Source of the DNA: Guillardia theta CCMP2712
Lineage: Eukaryota > Protista > Cryptophyta
Length of the DNA stretch: 64,000 bases
Assembly (NCBI RefSeq): GCF_000315625.1
Contig: NW_005434643.1
Span: forward strand, 297,698 to 361,697
Direction of reading: 5' to 3'
This document shows positions 25,185 to 32,846 of the stretch, piece by piece; position 1 is the stretch's first letter, and every line of letters begins with the position of its first letter. The notes beneath the pieces were generated by a model. It was not told the origin of the DNA. It worked only from the letters and a program-made list of their open reading frames with translations, and did not search any database. Position numbers and translations under genes: made by a program.

Positions 25185-28100
25185 TCACAGCACGACAACC
25201 TCGTCGTGGTTTGGCAGCTCTTTGACAAGTGTGTTGGACCTCGACAGTGAAGCATGCGACGGGGCGACCTGCGAGTCGACCAAGACGAGGCTGCTCGCAG
25301 TGACATCGAGGTCGAGGGAGGTAGTCGAGTCGCGGATCACTGTGACCACGACGGTAGCATGATTCTCGAGTAGAGAGAAGACCTGCGATGAGGTCAGAGT
25401 AGGTGAGAGTCATGGAGAACATGACAAGAAAGGTGAGAGGCAGTGAGATAGACGTCACCTCAGCATCCGTCACGATAGCAACATCTTGACCCTGCATCGC
25501 ATGCACAACATCTCCTTCCTTGAGAGACTCGCTCTCCGTATCTCCGTCAGCTTTCACAACAGTAAGCATGCCATCCTCTGTCCTCGCCAGCTCGAATCGC
25601 TGCTGGGCCCTGCCCTTCTCCAAGCTCTGCTTCAGCAACATGTTTCTCTTCCTGAGCAGCAAGGAACTCTCCTGGACTTGCTTCAACGCATTTCTGATCT
25701 CGATGTTGGAAGGAGCTTCCTCCACCTAGCAGCAGGTCAGCGACGGGAGAGGCCCCCGAGAGGTGAAGATGAATCAGACTTGGTCTATGGACTTGTCCAG
25801 CGTGAACACGCCTTTGACCCAATCACTTTCGTCCTGCATAGATGGTGAGCAAGACAAGGAGACAAGTCCAGGGACCTGCTGGGCAGCCGTGCGGTTGAAG
25901 AGGTTGGAGCGCATCTGATTCATCTTGGCGTGAAGCTCATTCCTCTTCATCTGCAACCAGGTCAACACACGACAGCGCCCACAGACAAGGGGAGAAGCAG
26001 CTCGAAGATGAGGATGAGGGGAAGAAGGAGGAGAGGAAGGGGAAGGGGAGGCTTTGAAATGAAGAGGAAAGAAAGGGGAGGGAGAAGGTTTTGATAAGAG
26101 AAAGACGACGTGAACGACGAAGAAGACAACGAGTAGGAGGACAAGGAAAACCTCGAGCAGGTCCAGCCCGTCCTTGACTTGCTTGCACTTGTCCTTCACC
26201 ATCTTATCGATGGGAGTCTCAGCATCAGCCTCCTCCTTCTGCTTGATGGCAGGGCTGTAGATTTCCACGTTCGCTGTCTCCCTGCCCTCCGACGCTCCTT
26301 TCTCTCCCTCCTCCACCCGAGCAGCTCCAAGTTTGACGTTCAAGTGCTTCGGAATCGAGTTCGTGTACACAGCAATACCATTCCTGCACGCCAGTCACTT
26401 ACGACTTCCCTTCTCCTCCCTTCCCTCCTCTCTCATTCACTAGAACCCTGATCTCCTCCACTTGTCCTCCTCCCTTCCTCCATTCGTCCTCCCGGCTCTT
26501 TCTCGCGCCCTCTGCTCCACCATCACCTGATGCTCGCCTCGTCGTCGAGGAACTTGTTCTGCACATTCATCCCACGGGAGGGAGCGAGAGGAGAGTCGAG
26601 GTCGCTGATCTTGATCTCTCGTTGCTTCCCCTTGGGCCGCAGGCTCCCTTCCAGCAGACAATCTCGATTCCACCTGCTCCCAGTAAGACCTGGCGCCCTG
26701 TCCCTTCCGCCAGACATATCTTCCTCCTTCTCACTCACTTGAGCCGGAGGTAAACCCTCCCCTTCACCGGCTCCTCCTCCTCGTAGGCTCCTTCCGGATC
26801 CTCGAGGTCGAACCATCCCTCCTGCATGAAACTGAGTCAATACATCCCTCCCCTCCCTCCCTCCCTCCCCTCCATCTCCCTCGCCTCTCCCTCCTCCTTC
26901 TTTTCCCCTGCCCCTTCTCCCCTCATCCCCTGAGCTCACCAGCGTACGGCAAGTCATGAGGGGGCAGAGTGGAACTCTGCCAAGTTGAATCAGCGGAAGA
27001 AAGGAGGTCGAGAGGTCATGGAGGAGGAGGACACAAGGACTGATGAGACGCGAGCAGGAAAAGAAGGAGAAGGGGGAGGAAGTGTTGTATGAGGGCTAAC
27101 CTGATTTCACCCATGAAGTCGTCGAGCGAGAGCTTATCATTGTCGAACATTTGTACGCGCAACATGGTGAAAGGGGCAGAGTGGTTCTGATACACCCCGT
27201 GATCGCTCAAGTTTCCTCCCTGCAATCGCGAGTGAGGGGAGGAGAAGAAAGGGCAAGACAAGTACCTCGAGGTACAGCTTGAACTTCTGATCGAACTTGG
27301 GGTTGAGGGACTTCGAAACTATCCGAGATTTCACCTGCTCCTCATCAGCATGCAAAAATCCCGCACCCCACTTCTTCCCTCACTTCCTCGTCATCTTCCC
27401 CTTCCTCTCTCCCTCCCCTTCTCCTCCTTGTCTTTCGTTTCCTCTTTTCCAATTTCTTCTTCCCAAAGATTGTACTTCTCCTCCCACCAGCCACCTCAAC
27501 CACCACCTCCACCATTTTGTCTCCCTCGCTCTCGCTTCCGTTCCGTTCAATCCTCTCTCACACCTTTGCGTACTCCCCAGGAAGAGACGGAGGTCCCTTC
27601 GACACAACCTGAAGAGATAAGAAGGTCAAGGAGACGAGGGGAAAAGAACTCAAACAGGAGCAGCAGCGGAAGGAGGGGGAAGAAGATGTGAGTTGGCTCA
27701 CCTTCCACATTGCCTGAAGAGAAATCGCAGATGGAACCCTCTTCACTCCCTGTGACACGTTTAAACGAGGAGGAGGTGGAGAGATAGGAGAGAGAGAGAG
27801 GTAGAAAGGGTGGAGGATGGGAAAGAGCAAGAGGGCAAGAGAGCAGTAAGAGGGGATGGGAAAGAGCAGGAGGGCAAGAGAGCAGGAAGAGGCAGGAGCA
27901 CTATAAGGAACAGCAAGTGGAAAGAGGGGGGTGTAGGTAGAGGGAGGAGCAGCATGCACGAACATTAACAGCCTCCGTCAAGTCGCCTTCCGACTTCCAT
28001 GAAGTCGATGAAGTGAGTCGTTTCCTGGCATGCTCTCAGTCCGATCCTCCTTGCTCCCTCTCAACCCCTGAACCCCATTCTCCTCTCTGACCATACCCTC

Positions 28101-31100
28101 CCTCCTCCCTCCTCCCTCCTCCCTCCTCCCTCCTCCCTCCTCCCTCCTCCCTCCTCCCTCCTCCCTCGTCTTACTCTCTCTCAAGGGCTGCACTCGTGGA
28201 CATGGTACGGGATCGTGCCAGGGGAGCAGAACGCTTTTCTTGAGGGATCTCGACCTTCAACCCCTTGAGGGGTCGACAAAGTTTATTCGCCTCCTTGTGT
28301 GTGGGCTGTGGCGCGTCCTGCTCCTGCTCTTTTCCCTTCATCCCGATCAGAGACTGTTGGAGCGACGAGTTAGTGAAGGCCGCGATGACAGAAGGAGAAG
28401 AGGCAGCTTCATGCCTTGAGGCGAGAGATGACCGCTGAAAGTCCTAACGTCTCGAGTCAGTTTCCTTCCTTTTCTTCGCTCTCAAGTCACCAGATTGTAC
28501 GAGCAGCTTCAGCCTCGCGAATCTCGTGAGGGCGTGAGACGACGCGTCCTCGATCTCCTCTGCTCTTCTTGTCAGTCTCCTGGACAACCAGCGGCTGCTC
28601 TCACCCTCCTCGCGAGCGGTAGGAACGAGGCTGAGGAGGCAGTAGGGGTCGCTCAAGCCGTTGGCGTCCATGGCCGCGAGCCCCTCCGCCTTCACCAGGT
28701 GAACTTCAACGTACCTACACCATCAGAGTCATCGTCCTCCCTCGGCCCCTTCCTTCTCCTCCTTCGCCTCCTCCTGTCCTTCTTCTTGTCCCTTCCCTGT
28801 CTTCGCCCTTCCTCTACTCTTCTTCCCTCCACCTTGTCATCTCTCCTCTGTCCTCCTCTTCCCCTTCCCCTCCCCCCGCCCCATAGTCTCATTCTCCACC
28901 TTGGGTTGACATCTTCAAAGGCGCGCAGCAGCTGCTTAGTGCGACGGTCTCGCAGCATGTCCTCCATGTCACTCCTGTCCCCACGTCACCCGTCCATCCT
29001 CCATCCTCCTCCTCCTCTCGCACCTGCTCGTAAACTTGCGGAAGACGCAACCAGGCCCTCCGCACTCTTTGATGGTCTCAGCCAGTCCCAGCGGCAGCGT
29101 CTCGAGGTACTCTTCCTCCTGCGCGCACGTTCCTCGTCACCAGCAGGAGCATCAGCGGGACTGCCTCACGTTCCACTCCTCGTAGACGACTTCCGGGATA
29201 ACGTGCAGCCTGACCAGCAGCTGACAAGCTCGTGAGATGTTGTGCTCGTGAGAAACTGACAGGGCGGATGCTTCTCACCGCGTGGATCACTTCGAACAGG
29301 CTGTGAACCCTGCGGTAGAGCTGGAGGAACCGGTCAGATACATGCTGAAACGAGGAGGGGAAACGACAAGGAAGAGGAAGAGGAAGAGGAAGAGGGAAAG
29401 GGAGAAAGAAAGGGAGAGGGAGAGGGAGAGGACGAAGTGCATGGAGATGATGGAGAGTAAGACAAAGACGGAGATAGACTGAAAGAGGGGAAGCAGCAGC
29501 AACTCACAATGTCGGCTCCCTCGAAGAAGATGAGCCATGCCAGCAGCACGAACTTGGCCTCATAGTAGGAAGGGATCTATCGCAAACTCAGGGGAGAGAA
29601 GAGCATATCCGAAGGCATCACCCAAGAGAGAAGAACGTCCGTCATGTTCTCAATCACATTCAGAATGAGGAAGATGATCCAGAACGACAGCCACTGCCTA
29701 TCGTCGTCTCCTCCTGCCGCCATGGCCGTCAATGCAAGCATGTAGAGCGGAAGGAGAGGGGCGAGAGGAAGACGAGAGGTGAAACCAAGAGGACGAGTTA
29801 CACGAGGGACACAAGGAGTGAAAGAAGCAAGAGAGGAAGCAACAAGGGAGGAGCAGCAGCAGAAGAGAAACAGGAGGAGCCTGTGAGGCTTGCCTGGAGT
29901 CTCGATGGCATGAACTGACTTGAAGCAGGCCCATAGAGCCAGCACGTAGGAGAGTCTCATCGCCCACAAGCCAGAGCCTGTCGGCTCGTTGATGCAGAAC
30001 AAGGGATGCGCTCCTATTCCGGGCCAGTCACAATATGATCTCCCTCCCCTCCCCTCTCCTCCCATCCCCTCCCCTCATACACTTTTTCCCATCTCCTTGT
30101 CCTCACATCACCTGGTTCTCCACACTTGGGAGCTTTGCCGAGTGCGTTCGCGAGGGCTCCCACGTTCTCCGACATCATCTTGTTCATCTGAACTCCTTGT
30201 CACCTCCTCCTCCTTCACATCTCACACACACCTTTCGCCATTTCTTGTAACCGTCCGACAACTGACAGCCTGGAAATTTGTAGGTGCACATGTTGGATGG
30301 CTGAGCAAGATGTCAGGAAGGGACAGGGGAACGGGAAGTTCACTCGCCTCGCATGAAGCAGGAAAGTGATACTTGCACTTAGGAACTTCACCGAACTCGT
30401 CGATCTGTAGAAACGTCACACTCGATCCTCGGGGACTCAGTCACATGCCTGAGGGCAGTAGCCAGCAGCCACGCATGGAAACTTGGAGCTCTCTGAAAGA
30501 GCCTGGGACAGATGAGAGGAGGCGATTGGGCACAGGGGCGGTAGGGGAGGGGAAATAAAGTATGAGGTTGAAAAACGTGTAGAAAGAACAAAGGAAGGAG
30601 ACAGAAAAACTGAAGATGAAAAGACAGGCGAAAGATGCTTCTTACTTTGACGAGCTTGTCGCAAATGGTGATACACCTAGATGAAAACATCACATCTGCT
30701 CGGTAGCCTAGTTCTCGTTCACCTCTTGAGGCCAAAGCACATCGCCCGGCAGTCAATGTCTGACAGCCCTCCTTCTGCTTCGCCGGACAGCATCATCGTC
30801 ATGACCTACGAGCCTTGAGCATCCTCAACCCCTTCCATCCCTCTCACCTTGTCGCATAGAGTGCACATGGCGCCTTCGCCTTTGAATATCACGTCGACGA
30901 CCTGGAGGTACAAGATCAGCCGGCGCAAGAGCTTCCTCTGAGAGCTGACCAGCATCCCGATGTCCTTGACGGTCGTGATGGTCTTGGCGAACGCCATGGT
31001 TCCCCACAGCATGACCCTAGAGGTTCTCGCAGTCACGCTCAGGCACACAGCATGTCAGCTCCTCGCTACCATGGCGGCGGTAAGGGAATCCCTCCTGACA

Positions 31101-31272
31101 ACAGACATGTCAAGCTTGAACAAGGCAGCTCAAGAGCTTTACCTTCAGCTGGGGTTGGGAAAGACACGAGCAACAATACAAACAGAAGCGTCGCTAGATT
31201 AAAAATGTTTACCGCAGGTAAATTCACAGAGCAATATCTTCTCTCCTCACCTGTCTGCGCTGTACTGACCAT
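25185..31272 (-). CDS. Multi-domain membrane protein: signal peptide, saposin-like/Cys-rich region, TB2/DP1-HVA22 (REEP) domain, split C2 domain, coiled coil, PDZ
   Basis: MVSTAQTATLLFVLLLVSFPTPAEG; CTLCDK...CRAMC...CITICDK...PCVAAGYCP; FKSVHAIETPGGDDDRQWLSFW...WIPSYYEAKFVLLAWL (HVA22); VHLVKAEGLAAMDANGLSDPYC...SKSLNPKFDQKF...MFDNDKLSLDDFMGE...WFDL (C2); LKEGDVVHAMQGQDV (PDZ). Junctions traced in frame except about 27300-28500. Confidence 0.75.
28096..28166 (+). repeat. (CCTCCCT)n microsatellite, intronic
   Basis: Direct inspection. Confidence 0.85.
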
Positions 31273-31601
31273 GGAGTCTTGTATTTTGGAGATCAATACA
31301 ACATCAAATCAGTTTCCTGGAAATGACAAACGTGAGCAAGAAGGAAAGAGAGTGATTTGCTATCCAAAAAAAAAATTGTCACGTCGTGCTGCTCATGTTT
31401 CGGCGCTAAGCCTTGAATGAAGAACTTGACGATTAAGACGATGTCCATTGTGGTATGGTACTCAAGCAAGCACAATCCAGATACGGCCCGAGAGTTGAAG
31501 AGCCGGTCATGCTCGCGAATATAACTAGCGGAGGTTGTGAGATGTTAGGCATCACAAACGGATGCGTCAGGCTGCATGAGGAGAGGTTGAATCTCGAGTC
31601 G

Positions 31602-31697
31602 GAGCATGAGCATGAGCATGAGCATGAGCATGAGCATGAGCATGAGCATGAGCATGAGCACGAGCACGAGCATGAGCATGAGCATGAGCATGAGCAC
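31602..31697 (+). repeat. (GAGCAT)16 hexanucleotide microsatellite
   Basis: Tandem GAGCAT with a few GAGCAC variants. Confidence 0.95.
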
Positions 31698-32846
31698 GAC
31701 GTGGGCAAAGAGCGGGGTTGAGCGTAGAGCTCTGCCTTGCAATGAGCGGGTGATTCACATATGTGGCAACGATTATCCTGGGGGACGGGGTACCCGTAGC
31801 TTTTCCGAGGTGGTGGGGGTGGGTGACTATCTATCTAGTGGGACCTATAGAAAGAAGATCTTATAAGTAAAAGTCTATTTGATCATGGCTATGGTCCTTT
31901 GCTCGGCTTCAGAGAAAGAGGTCGCACTTTGGCGAGTGGGTGGGGTGGTACTTAGAAGCTCCTGAGTAAAGACGCACTAGGAGGGAGAATGAGGGGTGCA
32001 TGCCAATATGGACCCCCTAAAGGTAGCACTGCCAAACCATGAATTAGGGGTAGGGGTGTATACCCCTGTAAGAAGTTTACTTCCTTGATCTTAGAGAGCT
32101 CCTAGGGGGGGTCCTAGTAACTCTCCTATCAGAAATCCAAGGAGGTTTTTTTACTACACATAGTAAACTCGTGGCTGGAGGGAATCAAGGAGGGGGTAGT
32201 GGAAGTAGGGGTGCAAGTGATTGTAAATCATGGTAGTCTAGACGGGTACAACGACATGGAGGAGGGGTACGAGGGTTAACAACAAACATGGTCTAGTCTT
32301 CATCTCCTATAGTCCCCGAGCCCGGACGTTGGCCGGTCGCCGGGCCCGTCCGAATGTGGGGGACGGGAGGCCCTCCCTTCTATCGTGGAGTAATTTAAAA
32401 TGTTGTTGATCTTTACTTCATTATAAAAACCGAAAATAATCCTTTCTGAAAATCTATGGTAGGGAAATATAAAACTCTATTATCCAATCCCCCAGTCTTT
32501 GCGCCCCAAACAGAATCTCCCTCCGAATCCAAACTGGGCAAGTTTGCAACAGGTAGAAGAGCAAGGGGAGCGGCGGGAAATAGTGGCGAGTATGAAGGCG
32601 ACACCTGAATAGTAGCAAGGTCTTTAGTATGATCAGAATTTAGATTGTCAGTCCTGTACTTCAAAAGAACATGTGGTGTTTTCAACCCGTTGTGATAACG
32701 AAACGGGTCGTGACAATGCCTCATGTGTACTCGGTGATCAAATGCACTTGAAAATTCTGGCAAGTCTCGTCATTGTTGAAATTTAGTAATGGAATAGAAT
32801 AAGAGTTTGTTTTCTTATCTAAGACGTTGCTTGTAGGGAACCAGCC

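What the first reader, a model, noticed from the sequence alone, without database searches (positions are those of the whole stretch)
25185..31272. Saposin-like + HVA22/REEP + split C2 + PDZ fusion: candidate membrane-contact tether
Seen: in-frame exon chain from a signal peptide through a saposin-like Cys pattern and a second Cys-rich block into a TB2/DP1-HVA22 domain, then a C2 domain retaining its acidic loops (DANGLSDPY, DNDKLSLDD) but interrupted by a long insert, then coiled coil and PDZ. Known: REEP/Yop1 proteins are small ER-curving proteins without luminal domains, saposins bind lipids, and C2 domains bind membranes via Ca2+. Inference: a protein coupling a luminal lipid-binding module and ER curvature to Ca2+-dependent binding of a second membrane.
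Basis: partly seen in the sequence, partly recalled or inferred. Interest (0 to 1): 0.7.

Follow-up and report, generated by a model that had tools for sequence, protein, structure and literature searches.

The report
Algal REEP protein with lumenal, C2, PDZ domains
One real, expressed 35-exon gene of the cryptophyte alga Guillardia theta encodes a 984-residue ER-shaping (REEP/HVA22) protein that also carries a conserved cysteine-rich lumenal domain, a calcium-type C2 domain split by a long loop and a PDZ-like domain; it belongs to an unnamed, unstudied family seen so far only in algae whose plastid lies inside the ER.

Summary
The minus strand from 31272 to 25185 is one gene of 35 exons.

- **One gene:** Transcript contigs of about 3.5 kb from three RNA studies span the locus. 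A 984-aa MMETSP ORF (P0005) maps residue for residue onto it.
- **Annotation error:** The G. theta reference annotation wrongly splits the gene into GUITHDRAFT_107876 and GUITHDRAFT_107875.
- **HVA22:** Pfam confirms it (E 3e-21).
- **C2:** There is one C2 domain (E 3e-15). Its two pieces are contiguous in the profile but separated by about 141 residues.
- **PDZ:** It fails Pfam's cut-off, but structure and profile comparisons support the fold.
- **"Saposin-like" region:** It is part of a conserved 14-cysteine domain with no Pfam family.
  - No SapB profile matches it.
  - A moderate AlphaFold model has saposin-like proteins as its best, though weak, matches (Z 5.4).
  - A sequence profile instead hits only the membrane-binding hairpin of perforin-2 (E about 1e-3).
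- **Family:** About 100 relatives share the lumenal domain plus HVA22, and long members also have C2. Named ones come only from cryptophytes, haptophytes and ochrophytes. The PDZ is nearly specific to Guillardia.

The tether function is plausible by analogy with MCTP and E-Syt proteins, but it is untested. The scan also noted a similar fusion on another piece of this genome (s1-434920), probably the paralogue.

The parts
25185..31272 (-). Whole coding region: 35 exons, 984 codons plus stop. The 5' UTR is about 44 nt (transcript start near 31316). The 3' UTR reaches about 24700.
   Evidence: P0005 maps 984/984 aa.
31143..31272 (-). Exons 1-2 (31272-31251 and 31193-31143): signal-peptide-like N-terminus, aa 1-24.
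   Evidence: Hydropathy peak at aa 1-19. The Teleaulax orthologue and two other relatives also start with a signal-peptide-like segment before the PPPW motif.
29985..30901 (-). Conserved 14-cysteine lumenal domain, aa about 58-206 (exons 5-12). The first half (aa about 62-129) is helical and saposin-like. It is followed by four short strands and a long helix.
   Evidence: Alignments A1, A3 and A5 show invariant Cys. AlphaFold model with pLDDT 71. VIA-align matches. No Pfam family.
29306..29927 (-). TB2/DP1/HVA22 (REEP) domain, aa 226-295 (exons 12-15). It is preceded by a hydrophobic segment at aa 209-227.
   Evidence: Pfam PF03134, 75.6 bits against a cut-off of 27.2. Matched exon by exon. 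Hydropathy.
28605..28714 (-). C2 domain, first piece (exon 19, aa 379-414; profile positions 2-36; holds the loop-1 acidic motif).
27573..28559 (-). Insert within the C2 domain, aa 415-555 (exons 20-25). It is basic and Ser/Thr-rich. Its sequence is not conserved, but its position is conserved in cryptophyte-type relatives.
   Evidence: Exons shown by joints and an open frame. Composition. Relatives.
26786..27572 (-). C2 domain, second piece (aa 556-645, exons 25-29; profile positions 34-104; holds the loop-3 acidic motif).
25606..26785 (-). Charged, probably helical linker, aa 646-870.
   Evidence: Composition only. A coiled coil was not tested.
25290..25605 (-). PDZ-like domain, aa 871-950 (end of exon 34 and start of exon 35).
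   Evidence: The ESM Atlas model of this protein has TM 0.65-0.75 to PDZ clusters. A profile search of PDB gives almost only PDZ domains, best E 0.0023. Pfam PDZ_2 scores only 15 bits.
25185..25289 (-). C-terminal tail, aa 951-984, and the stop codon.
   Evidence: There is a sub-threshold BORCS7 hit over aa 923-980.

Best explanation
This is a single gene for an ER membrane protein of the REEP/HVA22 family with extra modules on both sides of the membrane.

**Proposed arrangement**
- The N-terminal signal peptide places a conserved, disulfide-rich 14-cysteine domain in the ER lumen. The first half of that domain looks like a small saposin-type helical bundle.
- One hydrophobic segment (aa 209-227) crosses the membrane.
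- The HVA22 hairpin (aa about 244-292) sits as a wedge in the cytosolic leaflet, so the protein should gather on curved ER.
- The cytosolic part carries a C2 domain with intact acidic (Ca2+-type) loops. A 141-residue basic loop is inserted between strands 2 and 3.
- A long charged linker and a PDZ-like domain follow.

**Most likely mode of action**
It is an ER-anchored, Ca2+-responsive tether or adaptor of the MCTP / extended-synaptotagmin kind.
- The hairpin anchors it in curved ER.
- The C2 domain, helped by its basic insert, binds acidic lipids of a facing membrane.
- The PDZ docks the C-terminus of a partner protein.
- The lumenal domain binds lipid or a membrane surface on the lumenal side.

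**Shown:** gene structure, expression, domain content, and conservation of the lumenal-HVA22-C2 core.

**Inferred:** topology, ER residence, lipid and Ca2+ binding, and tethering.
For: - **One transcript and one ORF:**
- **HVA22:** 75.6 bits.
- **C2:** 56.8 bits in two stretches that are contiguous in the profile.
- **Acidic loop motifs:** read directly in the sequence.
- **C2 relatives:** after the family itself, the next hits are MCTP1 and Doc2 C2 proteins.
- **PDZ fold:**
- **Lumenal domain:** invariant Cys pattern in 71 non-redundant relatives. A signal peptide is present in this protein, in the Teleaulax orthologue and in two other relatives.
- **Saposin-like proteins are the top structural matches:** Na-SLP-1 Z 5.4, Ac-SLP-1 4.6, saposin D 4.3, granulysin 4.2, NK-lysin 4.1, caenopore-5 4.0, AOAH 3.9. 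These cover model residues 5-72 and nearly the whole target chains.
- **Core architecture is conserved:** 43 of 109 members have a detectable C2. Only two members with 250 aa or more after the HVA22 motif lack one, and one of those ends inside the C2 insert.
Against: - There are no functional data of any kind, and no paper mentions the gene or an HVA22-C2 fusion.
- Saposin support is weak. There is no SapB profile hit. Foldseek E values are 3.4 or worse. Z 5.4 is below the level at which helical matches are trustworthy, according to the tool's own note. The model is only pLDDT 71.
- The same stretch matches, by sequence, a beta-hairpin of perforin-2, which conflicts with the helical model.
- PDZ is below Pfam's cut-off (15.2 against 27 bits), and a classic GLGF loop is not evident.
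- Many relatives lack a separate signal peptide and begin at the PPPW-hydrophobic segment, so the lumenal placement is an inference.
- C2 domains can also bind their own membrane in cis.
Confidence: 0.45

Rival explanations
1. cER staple. The family is an adaptation of algae whose plastid lies inside the ER lumen. The lumenal domain grips the periplastidal membrane, the next membrane inwards. The protein therefore holds the chloroplast-ER membrane to the plastid, or moves lipid between them, while C2 and PDZ face the cytosol.
For: All named family members come from cryptophytes (Guillardia, Teleaulax), a haptophyte (Prymnesium) and ochrophytes (Thalassiosira, Odontella, Bacillariaceae, Tribonema, Chrysoparadoxa). 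By textbook knowledge, these are the lineages with an ER-enclosed plastid. Both candidate similarities of the lumenal domain (saposin-like proteins, perforin-2 P2 hairpin and PMC6989145) are to membrane- or lipid-binding modules.
Against: Most of the roughly 100 hits are unnamed marine metatranscriptome proteins. Absence from other eukaryotes was not tested exhaustively, because the word-indexed search scored only 8000 candidates. There are no localisation data. Ordinary ER lumen is an equally good address.
Confidence: 0.15
2. Cis-acting ER shaper. The protein does not bridge two membranes. The C2 domain and its basic insert bind the ER membrane in which the protein sits, which tunes curvature or tubule stability in response to Ca2+. 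The lumenal domain stabilises oligomers or senses the lumenal leaflet.
For: - REEP/Yop1 proteins shape ER by hairpin wedging and oligomerisation (established knowledge).
- HVA22 is the best-conserved part of the family.
- The C2 of diatom-type members is divergent and often below Pfam's cut-off. That fits a supporting rather than a targeting role.
Against: There are about 85 residues between HVA22 and C2. In this species a further roughly 220-residue linker and a PDZ follow, which suggests reach towards other partners. The nearest C2 relatives are those of tethers and vesicle proteins.
Confidence: 0.2
3. The lumenal domain is not saposin-like. It is related to the P2 domain of perforin-2 (MPEG1): its Cx3C-x5-Cx3C stretch forms a disulfide-braced beta-hairpin with a hydrophobic/basic tip that inserts into acidic membranes.
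For: - Family profiles searched against all PDB sequences hit only MPEG1 at E below 1; the single other hit is gp160 at E 2.6. The match covers its residues 401-455.
- E was 0.0019 with 20 sequences, 0.00058 with 32 and 0.0022 with 71. Five cysteines and the CVAAG motif align.
- That stretch of MPEG1 is the membrane-binding hairpin with tip LKIF, braced by two disulfides (PMC6989145).
- Only five residues separate the inner cysteines, which suits a tight hairpin.
Against: - The match is short (about 50 residues), borderline in E, and cysteine-driven.
- The AlphaFold model makes this region helical, with its best local confidence (pLDDT 81-84).
- The rest of the P2 domain is not matched.
Confidence: 0.2
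4. Artefact. Two neighbouring genes, as in the reference annotation (GUITHDRAFT_107876 and 107875), were merged by transcript assembly or by the reader.
For: The reference annotation has two models. Short-read contigs can join overlapping transcripts (caveat printed).
Against: - The frame is open across the supposed boundary, with spliced exons in between.
- The second model starts inside the C2 insert and so cuts a domain in two.
- Independent assemblies from three studies plus MMETSP give the same molecule.
- Orthologues in Teleaulax and many others have HVA22 and C2 in one protein.
Confidence: 0.02

Closest known systems
REEP / DP1 / Yop1 / HVA22 ER-shaping proteins (Pfam PF03134), especially the REEP1-4/HVA22 type with one N-terminal hydrophobic segment before the hairpin
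   Same: Clear HVA22 domain with the conserved acidic-Q-W-L-x-F/Y-W motif, the hydrophobic hairpin and a following amphipathic stretch.
   Different: Known members are small and have no lumenal domain. This protein has a roughly 180-residue cysteine-rich domain before the first membrane segment, and about 690 residues (C2, linker, PDZ) after the hairpin.
MCTP / QUIRKY / FTIP proteins (several C2 domains plus a reticulon-like ER hairpin region, Pfam PF08372)
   Same: They combine Ca2+-type C2 domains with an ER hairpin anchor. Their C2 domains are the nearest non-family hits. They are the best functional analogy for an ER-anchored tether.
   Different: The order is reversed: here the anchor is N-terminal to the C2. 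The anchor is HVA22, not PF08372 (no hit). There is one C2 rather than 3-4. MCTPs have no lumenal domain and no PDZ.
Extended synaptotagmins / tricalbins / plant SYT1
   Same: ER hairpin anchor plus cytosolic C2 domain(s) that bind acidic lipids of a second membrane.
   Different: No SMP lipid-transfer domain is found here. Any lipid-handling module would be on the lumenal side instead.
Saposin-like proteins (SAPLIPs: saposins, NK-lysin, granulysin, caenopores, Na-SLP-1, the AOAH N-domain)
   Same: CxxC at the start and Cx5C at the end of a roughly 60-residue helical segment. These proteins are the top structural matches of the model.
   Different: No SapB_1 or SapB_2 profile match. There are eight cysteines rather than six, and the segment is shorter. 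It is fused to a further beta/helix subdomain with six more cysteines. The Z scores are only 4-5.4.
Perforin-2 (MPEG1) P2-domain membrane-binding hairpin
   Same: Cx3C-x5/6-Cx3C followed about 16 residues later by CVAAG. MPEG1 is the only PDB protein hit at E below 1 by the family profile.
   Different: The match is only about 50 residues long and borderline in E. The region is predicted helical here but is a beta-hairpin in MPEG1 (PMC6989145). No MACPF domain is present.

Membership tests
REEP/HVA22 (PF03134) | Match to the TB2/DP1/HVA22 profile above Pfam's gathering score | tested here: met
   75.6 bits against a cut-off of 27.2, E 3e-21, aa 226-295 covering profile positions 2-73 of 77. 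Also matched exon by exon on the window.
REEP/HVA22 (PF03134) | Hydrophobic hairpin segments flanking the conserved motif | tested here: met
   Hydropathy peaks at aa 247-265 and 274-292, and an amphipathic stretch at 298-316.
REEP/HVA22 (PF03134) | ER residence and membrane-curving activity | not testable with these tools
   Needs localisation and reconstitution experiments.
C2 domain (PF00168) | Match to the C2 profile above the gathering score | tested here: met
   56.8 bits against a cut-off of 22, E 2.8e-15, in two stretches. The exon pieces cover profile positions 2-36, 33-59 and 61-89.
C2 domain (PF00168) | Acidic Ca2+-ligand residues in loops 1 and 3 | tested here: met
   Read directly: the loop-1 motif D-x-N-G-x-S-D-P-Y and the loop-3 motif D-N-D-x5-D-D are present. 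Ca2+ binding itself was not tested.
C2 domain (PF00168) | One uninterrupted beta-sandwich of about 100-130 residues | tested here: not met
   About 141 residues are inserted after profile position 36. The same split is seen in Teleaulax and other relatives.
PDZ domain (PF00595 / PF13180 / PF17820) | Match to a PDZ profile above the gathering score | tested here: not met
   PDZ_2 scores 15.2 bits against a cut-off of 27, E 0.027. No hit on the single exons.
PDZ domain (PF00595 / PF13180 / PF17820) | PDZ fold | tested here: met
   The ESM Atlas model of aa 871-950 has TM 0.65-0.75 to nine neighbour cluster sets, eight of them PDZ by Pfam family or name. A 2-sequence profile against PDB gives top hits that are almost all PDZ domains (MPDZ E 0.0023, GRIP1 0.0042).
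PDZ domain (PF00595 / PF13180 / PF17820) | Carboxylate-binding loop (GLGF-type) before strand 2 | tested here: inconclusive
   Only a D-G-M-L stretch lies at the expected place (read from P0005).
Saposin B-type domain (PF05184 / PF03489) | Match to the SapB_1 or SapB_2 profiles | tested here: not met
   No hit at E up to 1 for aa 25-195. No hit at E up to 10 in 20 family members.
Saposin B-type domain (PF05184 / PF03489) | Six-cysteine pattern CxxC ... C ... C ... Cx5C | tested here: inconclusive
   The outer CxxC and Cx5C pairs are present and invariant. The middle has four cysteines (Cx3C-x5-Cx3C) instead of two, and the spacings are shorter.
Saposin B-type domain (PF05184 / PF03489) | Four/five-helix saposin fold | tested here: inconclusive
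   The model has pLDDT 71 and pTM 0.52. VIA-align puts saposin-like proteins on top, but only at Z 4-5.4. The best Foldseek E is 3.4, also a saposin-like protein.
Perforin-2 P2 domain | Significant similarity over the P2 domain | tested here: inconclusive
   Only about 50 residues match, at E 6e-4 to 2e-3. The rest of P2 is not matched. Secondary structure disagrees with the model.
MCTP family | C-terminal PRT_C hairpin region (PF08372) and multiple C2 domains | tested here: not met
   No PF08372 hit, and a single C2.
BORCS7 (PF16088) | Match above the gathering score | tested here: not met
   17-23 bits against a cut-off of 27.3.

The most novel reading that the evidence does not exclude
The lumenal-domain/HVA22/C2 family is specific to algae whose plastid sits inside the ER lumen (cryptophytes, haptophytes, ochrophytes). 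Its cysteine-rich lumenal domain binds the periplastidal membrane, which would make these proteins the first candidates for a physical link, or lipid conduit, between the chloroplast ER and the plastid. That link would be coupled to Ca2+-dependent contacts on the cytosolic side.
Probability: 0.12. Interest if true: 0.85.

Novelty: new variant of a known kind. Interest (0 to 1): 0.6.

Why it matters
REEP/Yop1/HVA22 proteins are thought of as minimal curvature wedges with nothing in the ER lumen. Here a conserved family adds two things to the wedge: a disulfide-rich lumenal module whose only detectable similarities are to membrane-active domains, and a cytosolic Ca2+-type C2 domain. That makes a protein able to act on both faces of the ER membrane at once.

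How the ER that surrounds complex plastids is attached to, and exchanges lipids with, the membrane beneath it is an open question. A family whose named members all come from those algae gives a concrete candidate that can be tested in transformable diatoms.

At a practical level, the G. theta reference annotation of this locus is wrong. Two partial models should be merged into one 984-residue protein. The lumenal domain also deserves a family definition of its own.

Tried and rejected
1. **My own exon model of the 5' third.** I built it from coverage bins and GT-AG rules. It suggested that the signal-peptide/Cys-rich exons were out of frame with HVA22, that is a long 5' leader with upstream ORFs. 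This was wrong. The MMETSP protein showed three small exons in 30848-31094 and GC-AG introns that I had discounted.
2. **Pfam exon by exon.** It could not see the PDZ or any lumenal family.
3. **First AlphaFold run with 20 sequences.** pLDDT 53, unusable.
4. **ESM Atlas look-alikes for the lumenal part.** Nothing usable.
5. **Foldseek against PDB.** No match below E 3.4.
6. **Lumenal profile against the organism's own genome.** It found only this gene's exon 8, so it could not locate the paralogue.
7. **Regex census of C2 acidic loops across the family.** Too crude to use.
8. **BORCS7 reading of the tail.** Rejected as sub-threshold.
9. **Two-gene reading of the reference annotation.** Rejected.
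10. **Literature.** There is no paper on these accessions or on HVA22-C2 fusions.

**Procedural notes**
- Read laying was given 6,000 letters.
- Window-derived searches were done exon by exon, by reference.
- The joined spliced model was never sent to any search tool. Full-length searches used the database protein P0005.
- The one local join served only to check that the spliced exons translate to P0005.
Full report
**Organism and locus.** The window is eukaryotic and intron-rich. Earlier notes of this scan called it a cryptophyte. I confirmed that: the protein encoded at the 3' half of the locus is identical to Guillardia theta CCMP2712 GUITHDRAFT_107875 (XP_005833244.1, UniProt L1JDT9). The gene lies on the minus strand.

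**Is it one gene?** Pfam scans of single open frames, given by reference, placed HVA22 in two exons. They placed one C2 domain in three exons whose profile coordinates (2-36, 33-59, 61-89) follow one another.

Laying RNA data on 25301-31300 showed one transcript contig in each of three studies (3493, 3485 and 2803 nt). The contigs carry 33 joints, all with intron-like ends on the minus strand. The exons between the two C2 pieces are real and keep one frame open for 452 codons, while the other two frames have 12 and 19 stops.

A library-wide search with the exon holding the putative PDZ found the G. theta model P0001 (444 aa). Its 90% cluster also holds P0005, a 984-aa complete ORF from an MMETSP transcript. 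P0005 maps 984/984 residues onto the window in 35 exons, from the ATG at 31272 to the stop at 25187-25185. All acceptors are AG. Thirty donors are GT and four are GC. Introns are 42-229 nt, median 57.5. The 15 joints printed coincide with these borders.

The reference annotation splits the locus. GUITHDRAFT_107876 (P0042, 358 aa) starts at Met35. GUITHDRAFT_107875 starts inside the C2 insert. That split cuts a domain in two and is contradicted by the transcripts.

My own attempt to rebuild the 5' exons from coverage gave a wrong, out-of-frame picture, because I discounted GC-AG introns and missed a small exon. I withdraw it.

**Domains.** On P0005, Pfam gives two families above threshold: HVA22 (aa 226-295, 75.6 bits) and C2 (56.8 bits, two stretches).

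The C2 pieces are aa about 379-414 and 556-639. The 141 residues between them are basic and Ser/Thr-rich. Their sequence is not conserved, but an insert at the same place occurs in Teleaulax and other cryptophyte-type relatives.

The PDZ is below Pfam's cut-off (PDZ_2, 15 bits). Three other lines support it:
- The ESM Atlas's own model of this very protein superposes over aa 871-950 on PDZ cluster models at TM 0.65-0.75.
- Language-model neighbours of that segment are PDZ clusters.
- A two-sequence profile finds almost only PDZ domains in PDB, best E 0.0023.

I accept a PDZ-like fold. Membership by profile is not met. The 'coiled coil' between C2 and PDZ was not tested.

**The lumenal module.** Alignments of 20, 32 and 71 relatives show 14 near-invariant cysteines: CxxC, Cx3C-x5-Cx3C, P-C-x-A-A-G-x-C, then six more. 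Pfam has no family for it, and no SapB hit appears in any of 20 members.

With 71 sequences AlphaFold gave a moderate model (pLDDT 71, pTM 0.52). It has a helical first half, four short strands and a long helix. Foldseek found nothing significant. Its best row, at E 3.4, was a saposin-like protein.

The exhaustive VIA-align search of 48,161 chains ranked saposin-like proteins first:
- Na-SLP-1, Z 5.4 (73 aligned residues, rmsd 3.1)
- Ac-SLP-1, Z 4.6
- saposin D, Z 4.3
- granulysin, Z 4.2
- NK-lysin, Z 4.1
- caenopore-5, Z 4.0
- AOAH N-domain, Z 3.9

All of these lie on model residues 5-72 and cover almost the whole target. These Z values are low by the tool's own calibration. The fold assignment is therefore a lead with some support, not a result.

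A profile search of all PDB sequences gave a different pointer. At E below 1 it hit only perforin-2/MPEG1, residues 401-455, at E 0.0019, 0.00058 and 0.0022 with the three alignments; the one other hit was gp160 at E 2.6. [quoted passage not shown]

The two pointers disagree on secondary structure, and I cannot resolve this here. Both point to membrane-active modules.

**The family.** Three homology searches gave about 100 proteins with the lumenal domain followed by HVA22. Of 109 collected members, 43 have a detectable C2. Only two members with 250 aa or more after the HVA22 motif lack one, and one of those ends inside the C2 insert. Further Pfam scans found no other domain.

Named members are:
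- G. theta: this gene and a 702-aa paralogue, A0A7S4UTK0
- Teleaulax amphioxeia
- Prymnesium polylepis
- Thalassiosira minuscula and T. exigua
- Odontella aurita
- a Bacillariaceae MAG
- Tribonema minus
- Chrysoparadoxa australica

. The rest are unnamed marine sequences.

The PDZ region was found only in G. theta and in one 105-aa fragment (only the first 23 family sequences were checked for it).

This protein, the Teleaulax orthologue and two other relatives have a signal peptide before a PPPW-hydrophobic segment. Many others begin at that segment.

I did not map it.

**How it probably works.** Three things are shown. It is one expressed gene. Its order is signal peptide, Cys-rich domain, hydrophobic segment, HVA22 hairpin, split C2, linker, PDZ-like domain. 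The first four modules are conserved across three algal phyla.

The topology is inferred. The Cys-rich domain would be in the ER lumen, given the signal peptide and invariant cysteines. One spanning segment (aa 209-227) would cross the membrane. The hairpin would wedge into the cytosolic leaflet, and everything after it would be cytosolic.

By analogy with MCTPs and extended synaptotagmins (established knowledge), the most likely role is an anchor in curved ER whose C2 binds acidic lipids of a facing membrane under Ca2+ control. The PDZ would add a protein partner, and the lumenal module would contact lipid or membrane on the other side.

The rivals are:
- a purely cis-acting ER shaper;
- a link between the chloroplast ER and the periplastidal membrane, suggested by the taxon range but not tested;
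- a P2-type hairpin rather than a saposin fold for the lumenal module.

A chimeric-assembly artefact is essentially excluded.

**Novelty.** The sequence is in public databases as 'hypothetical' or 'C2 domain-containing' protein, split in two in the genome annotation. I found no paper on it, on the family or on an HVA22-C2 fusion. It is a new variant of a known kind, a REEP-family protein, with an undescribed conserved lumenal domain.

Noticed in passing
window 30448, 30347, 29893, 28414 (minus strand donors): Four of the 34 introns of this gene are GC-AG (about 12%), far more than the roughly 1% usual in eukaryotes. One is seen directly as a CT..GC joint in the RNA contigs. This may be a general feature of G. 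theta introns and a trap for gene finders.
   Followed up: partly
window 25185-31272: The G. theta reference annotation splits this gene into GUITHDRAFT_107876 (358 aa, starts at Met35, lacks the signal peptide) and GUITHDRAFT_107875 (444 aa, starts inside the C2 insert). They should be merged.
   Followed up: yes
window 25197-25370 (aa 923-980): There is a sub-threshold Pfam match to BORCS7, a BLOC-one-related complex subunit (E 9e-5 to 7e-3, 17-23 bits against a cut-off of 27.3). It overlaps the last PDZ strand and the Ser/Thr/Val-rich tail. It is probably compositional, but it remains unexplained.
   Followed up: partly
window 25301-25500 and 28751-29007: In run X2 a second contig of depth about 620 overlaps the last coding exons. 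Contigs of X2 and X3 end with loose ends inside the intron at 28715-28899 and near 29007. Another, highly expressed RNA, or a repeat, therefore overlaps this gene.
   Followed up: no
window about 31570-31700: A long (CA)n/(TG)n microsatellite lies about 250 bp upstream of the transcript start. It gives the HEHE / CSCS / MLML open frames.
   Followed up: no
proteins P0032 and P0050 (Prymnesium polylepis); P0005 and P0012 (G. theta): The family has at least two old types, told apart by the N-terminus: a PPPW type and a K-P-x-V-x-x-W-x-x-L-N type. Prymnesium has one of each, G. theta has two of the PPPW type, and named diatoms have the second type. No tree was built.
   Followed up: no
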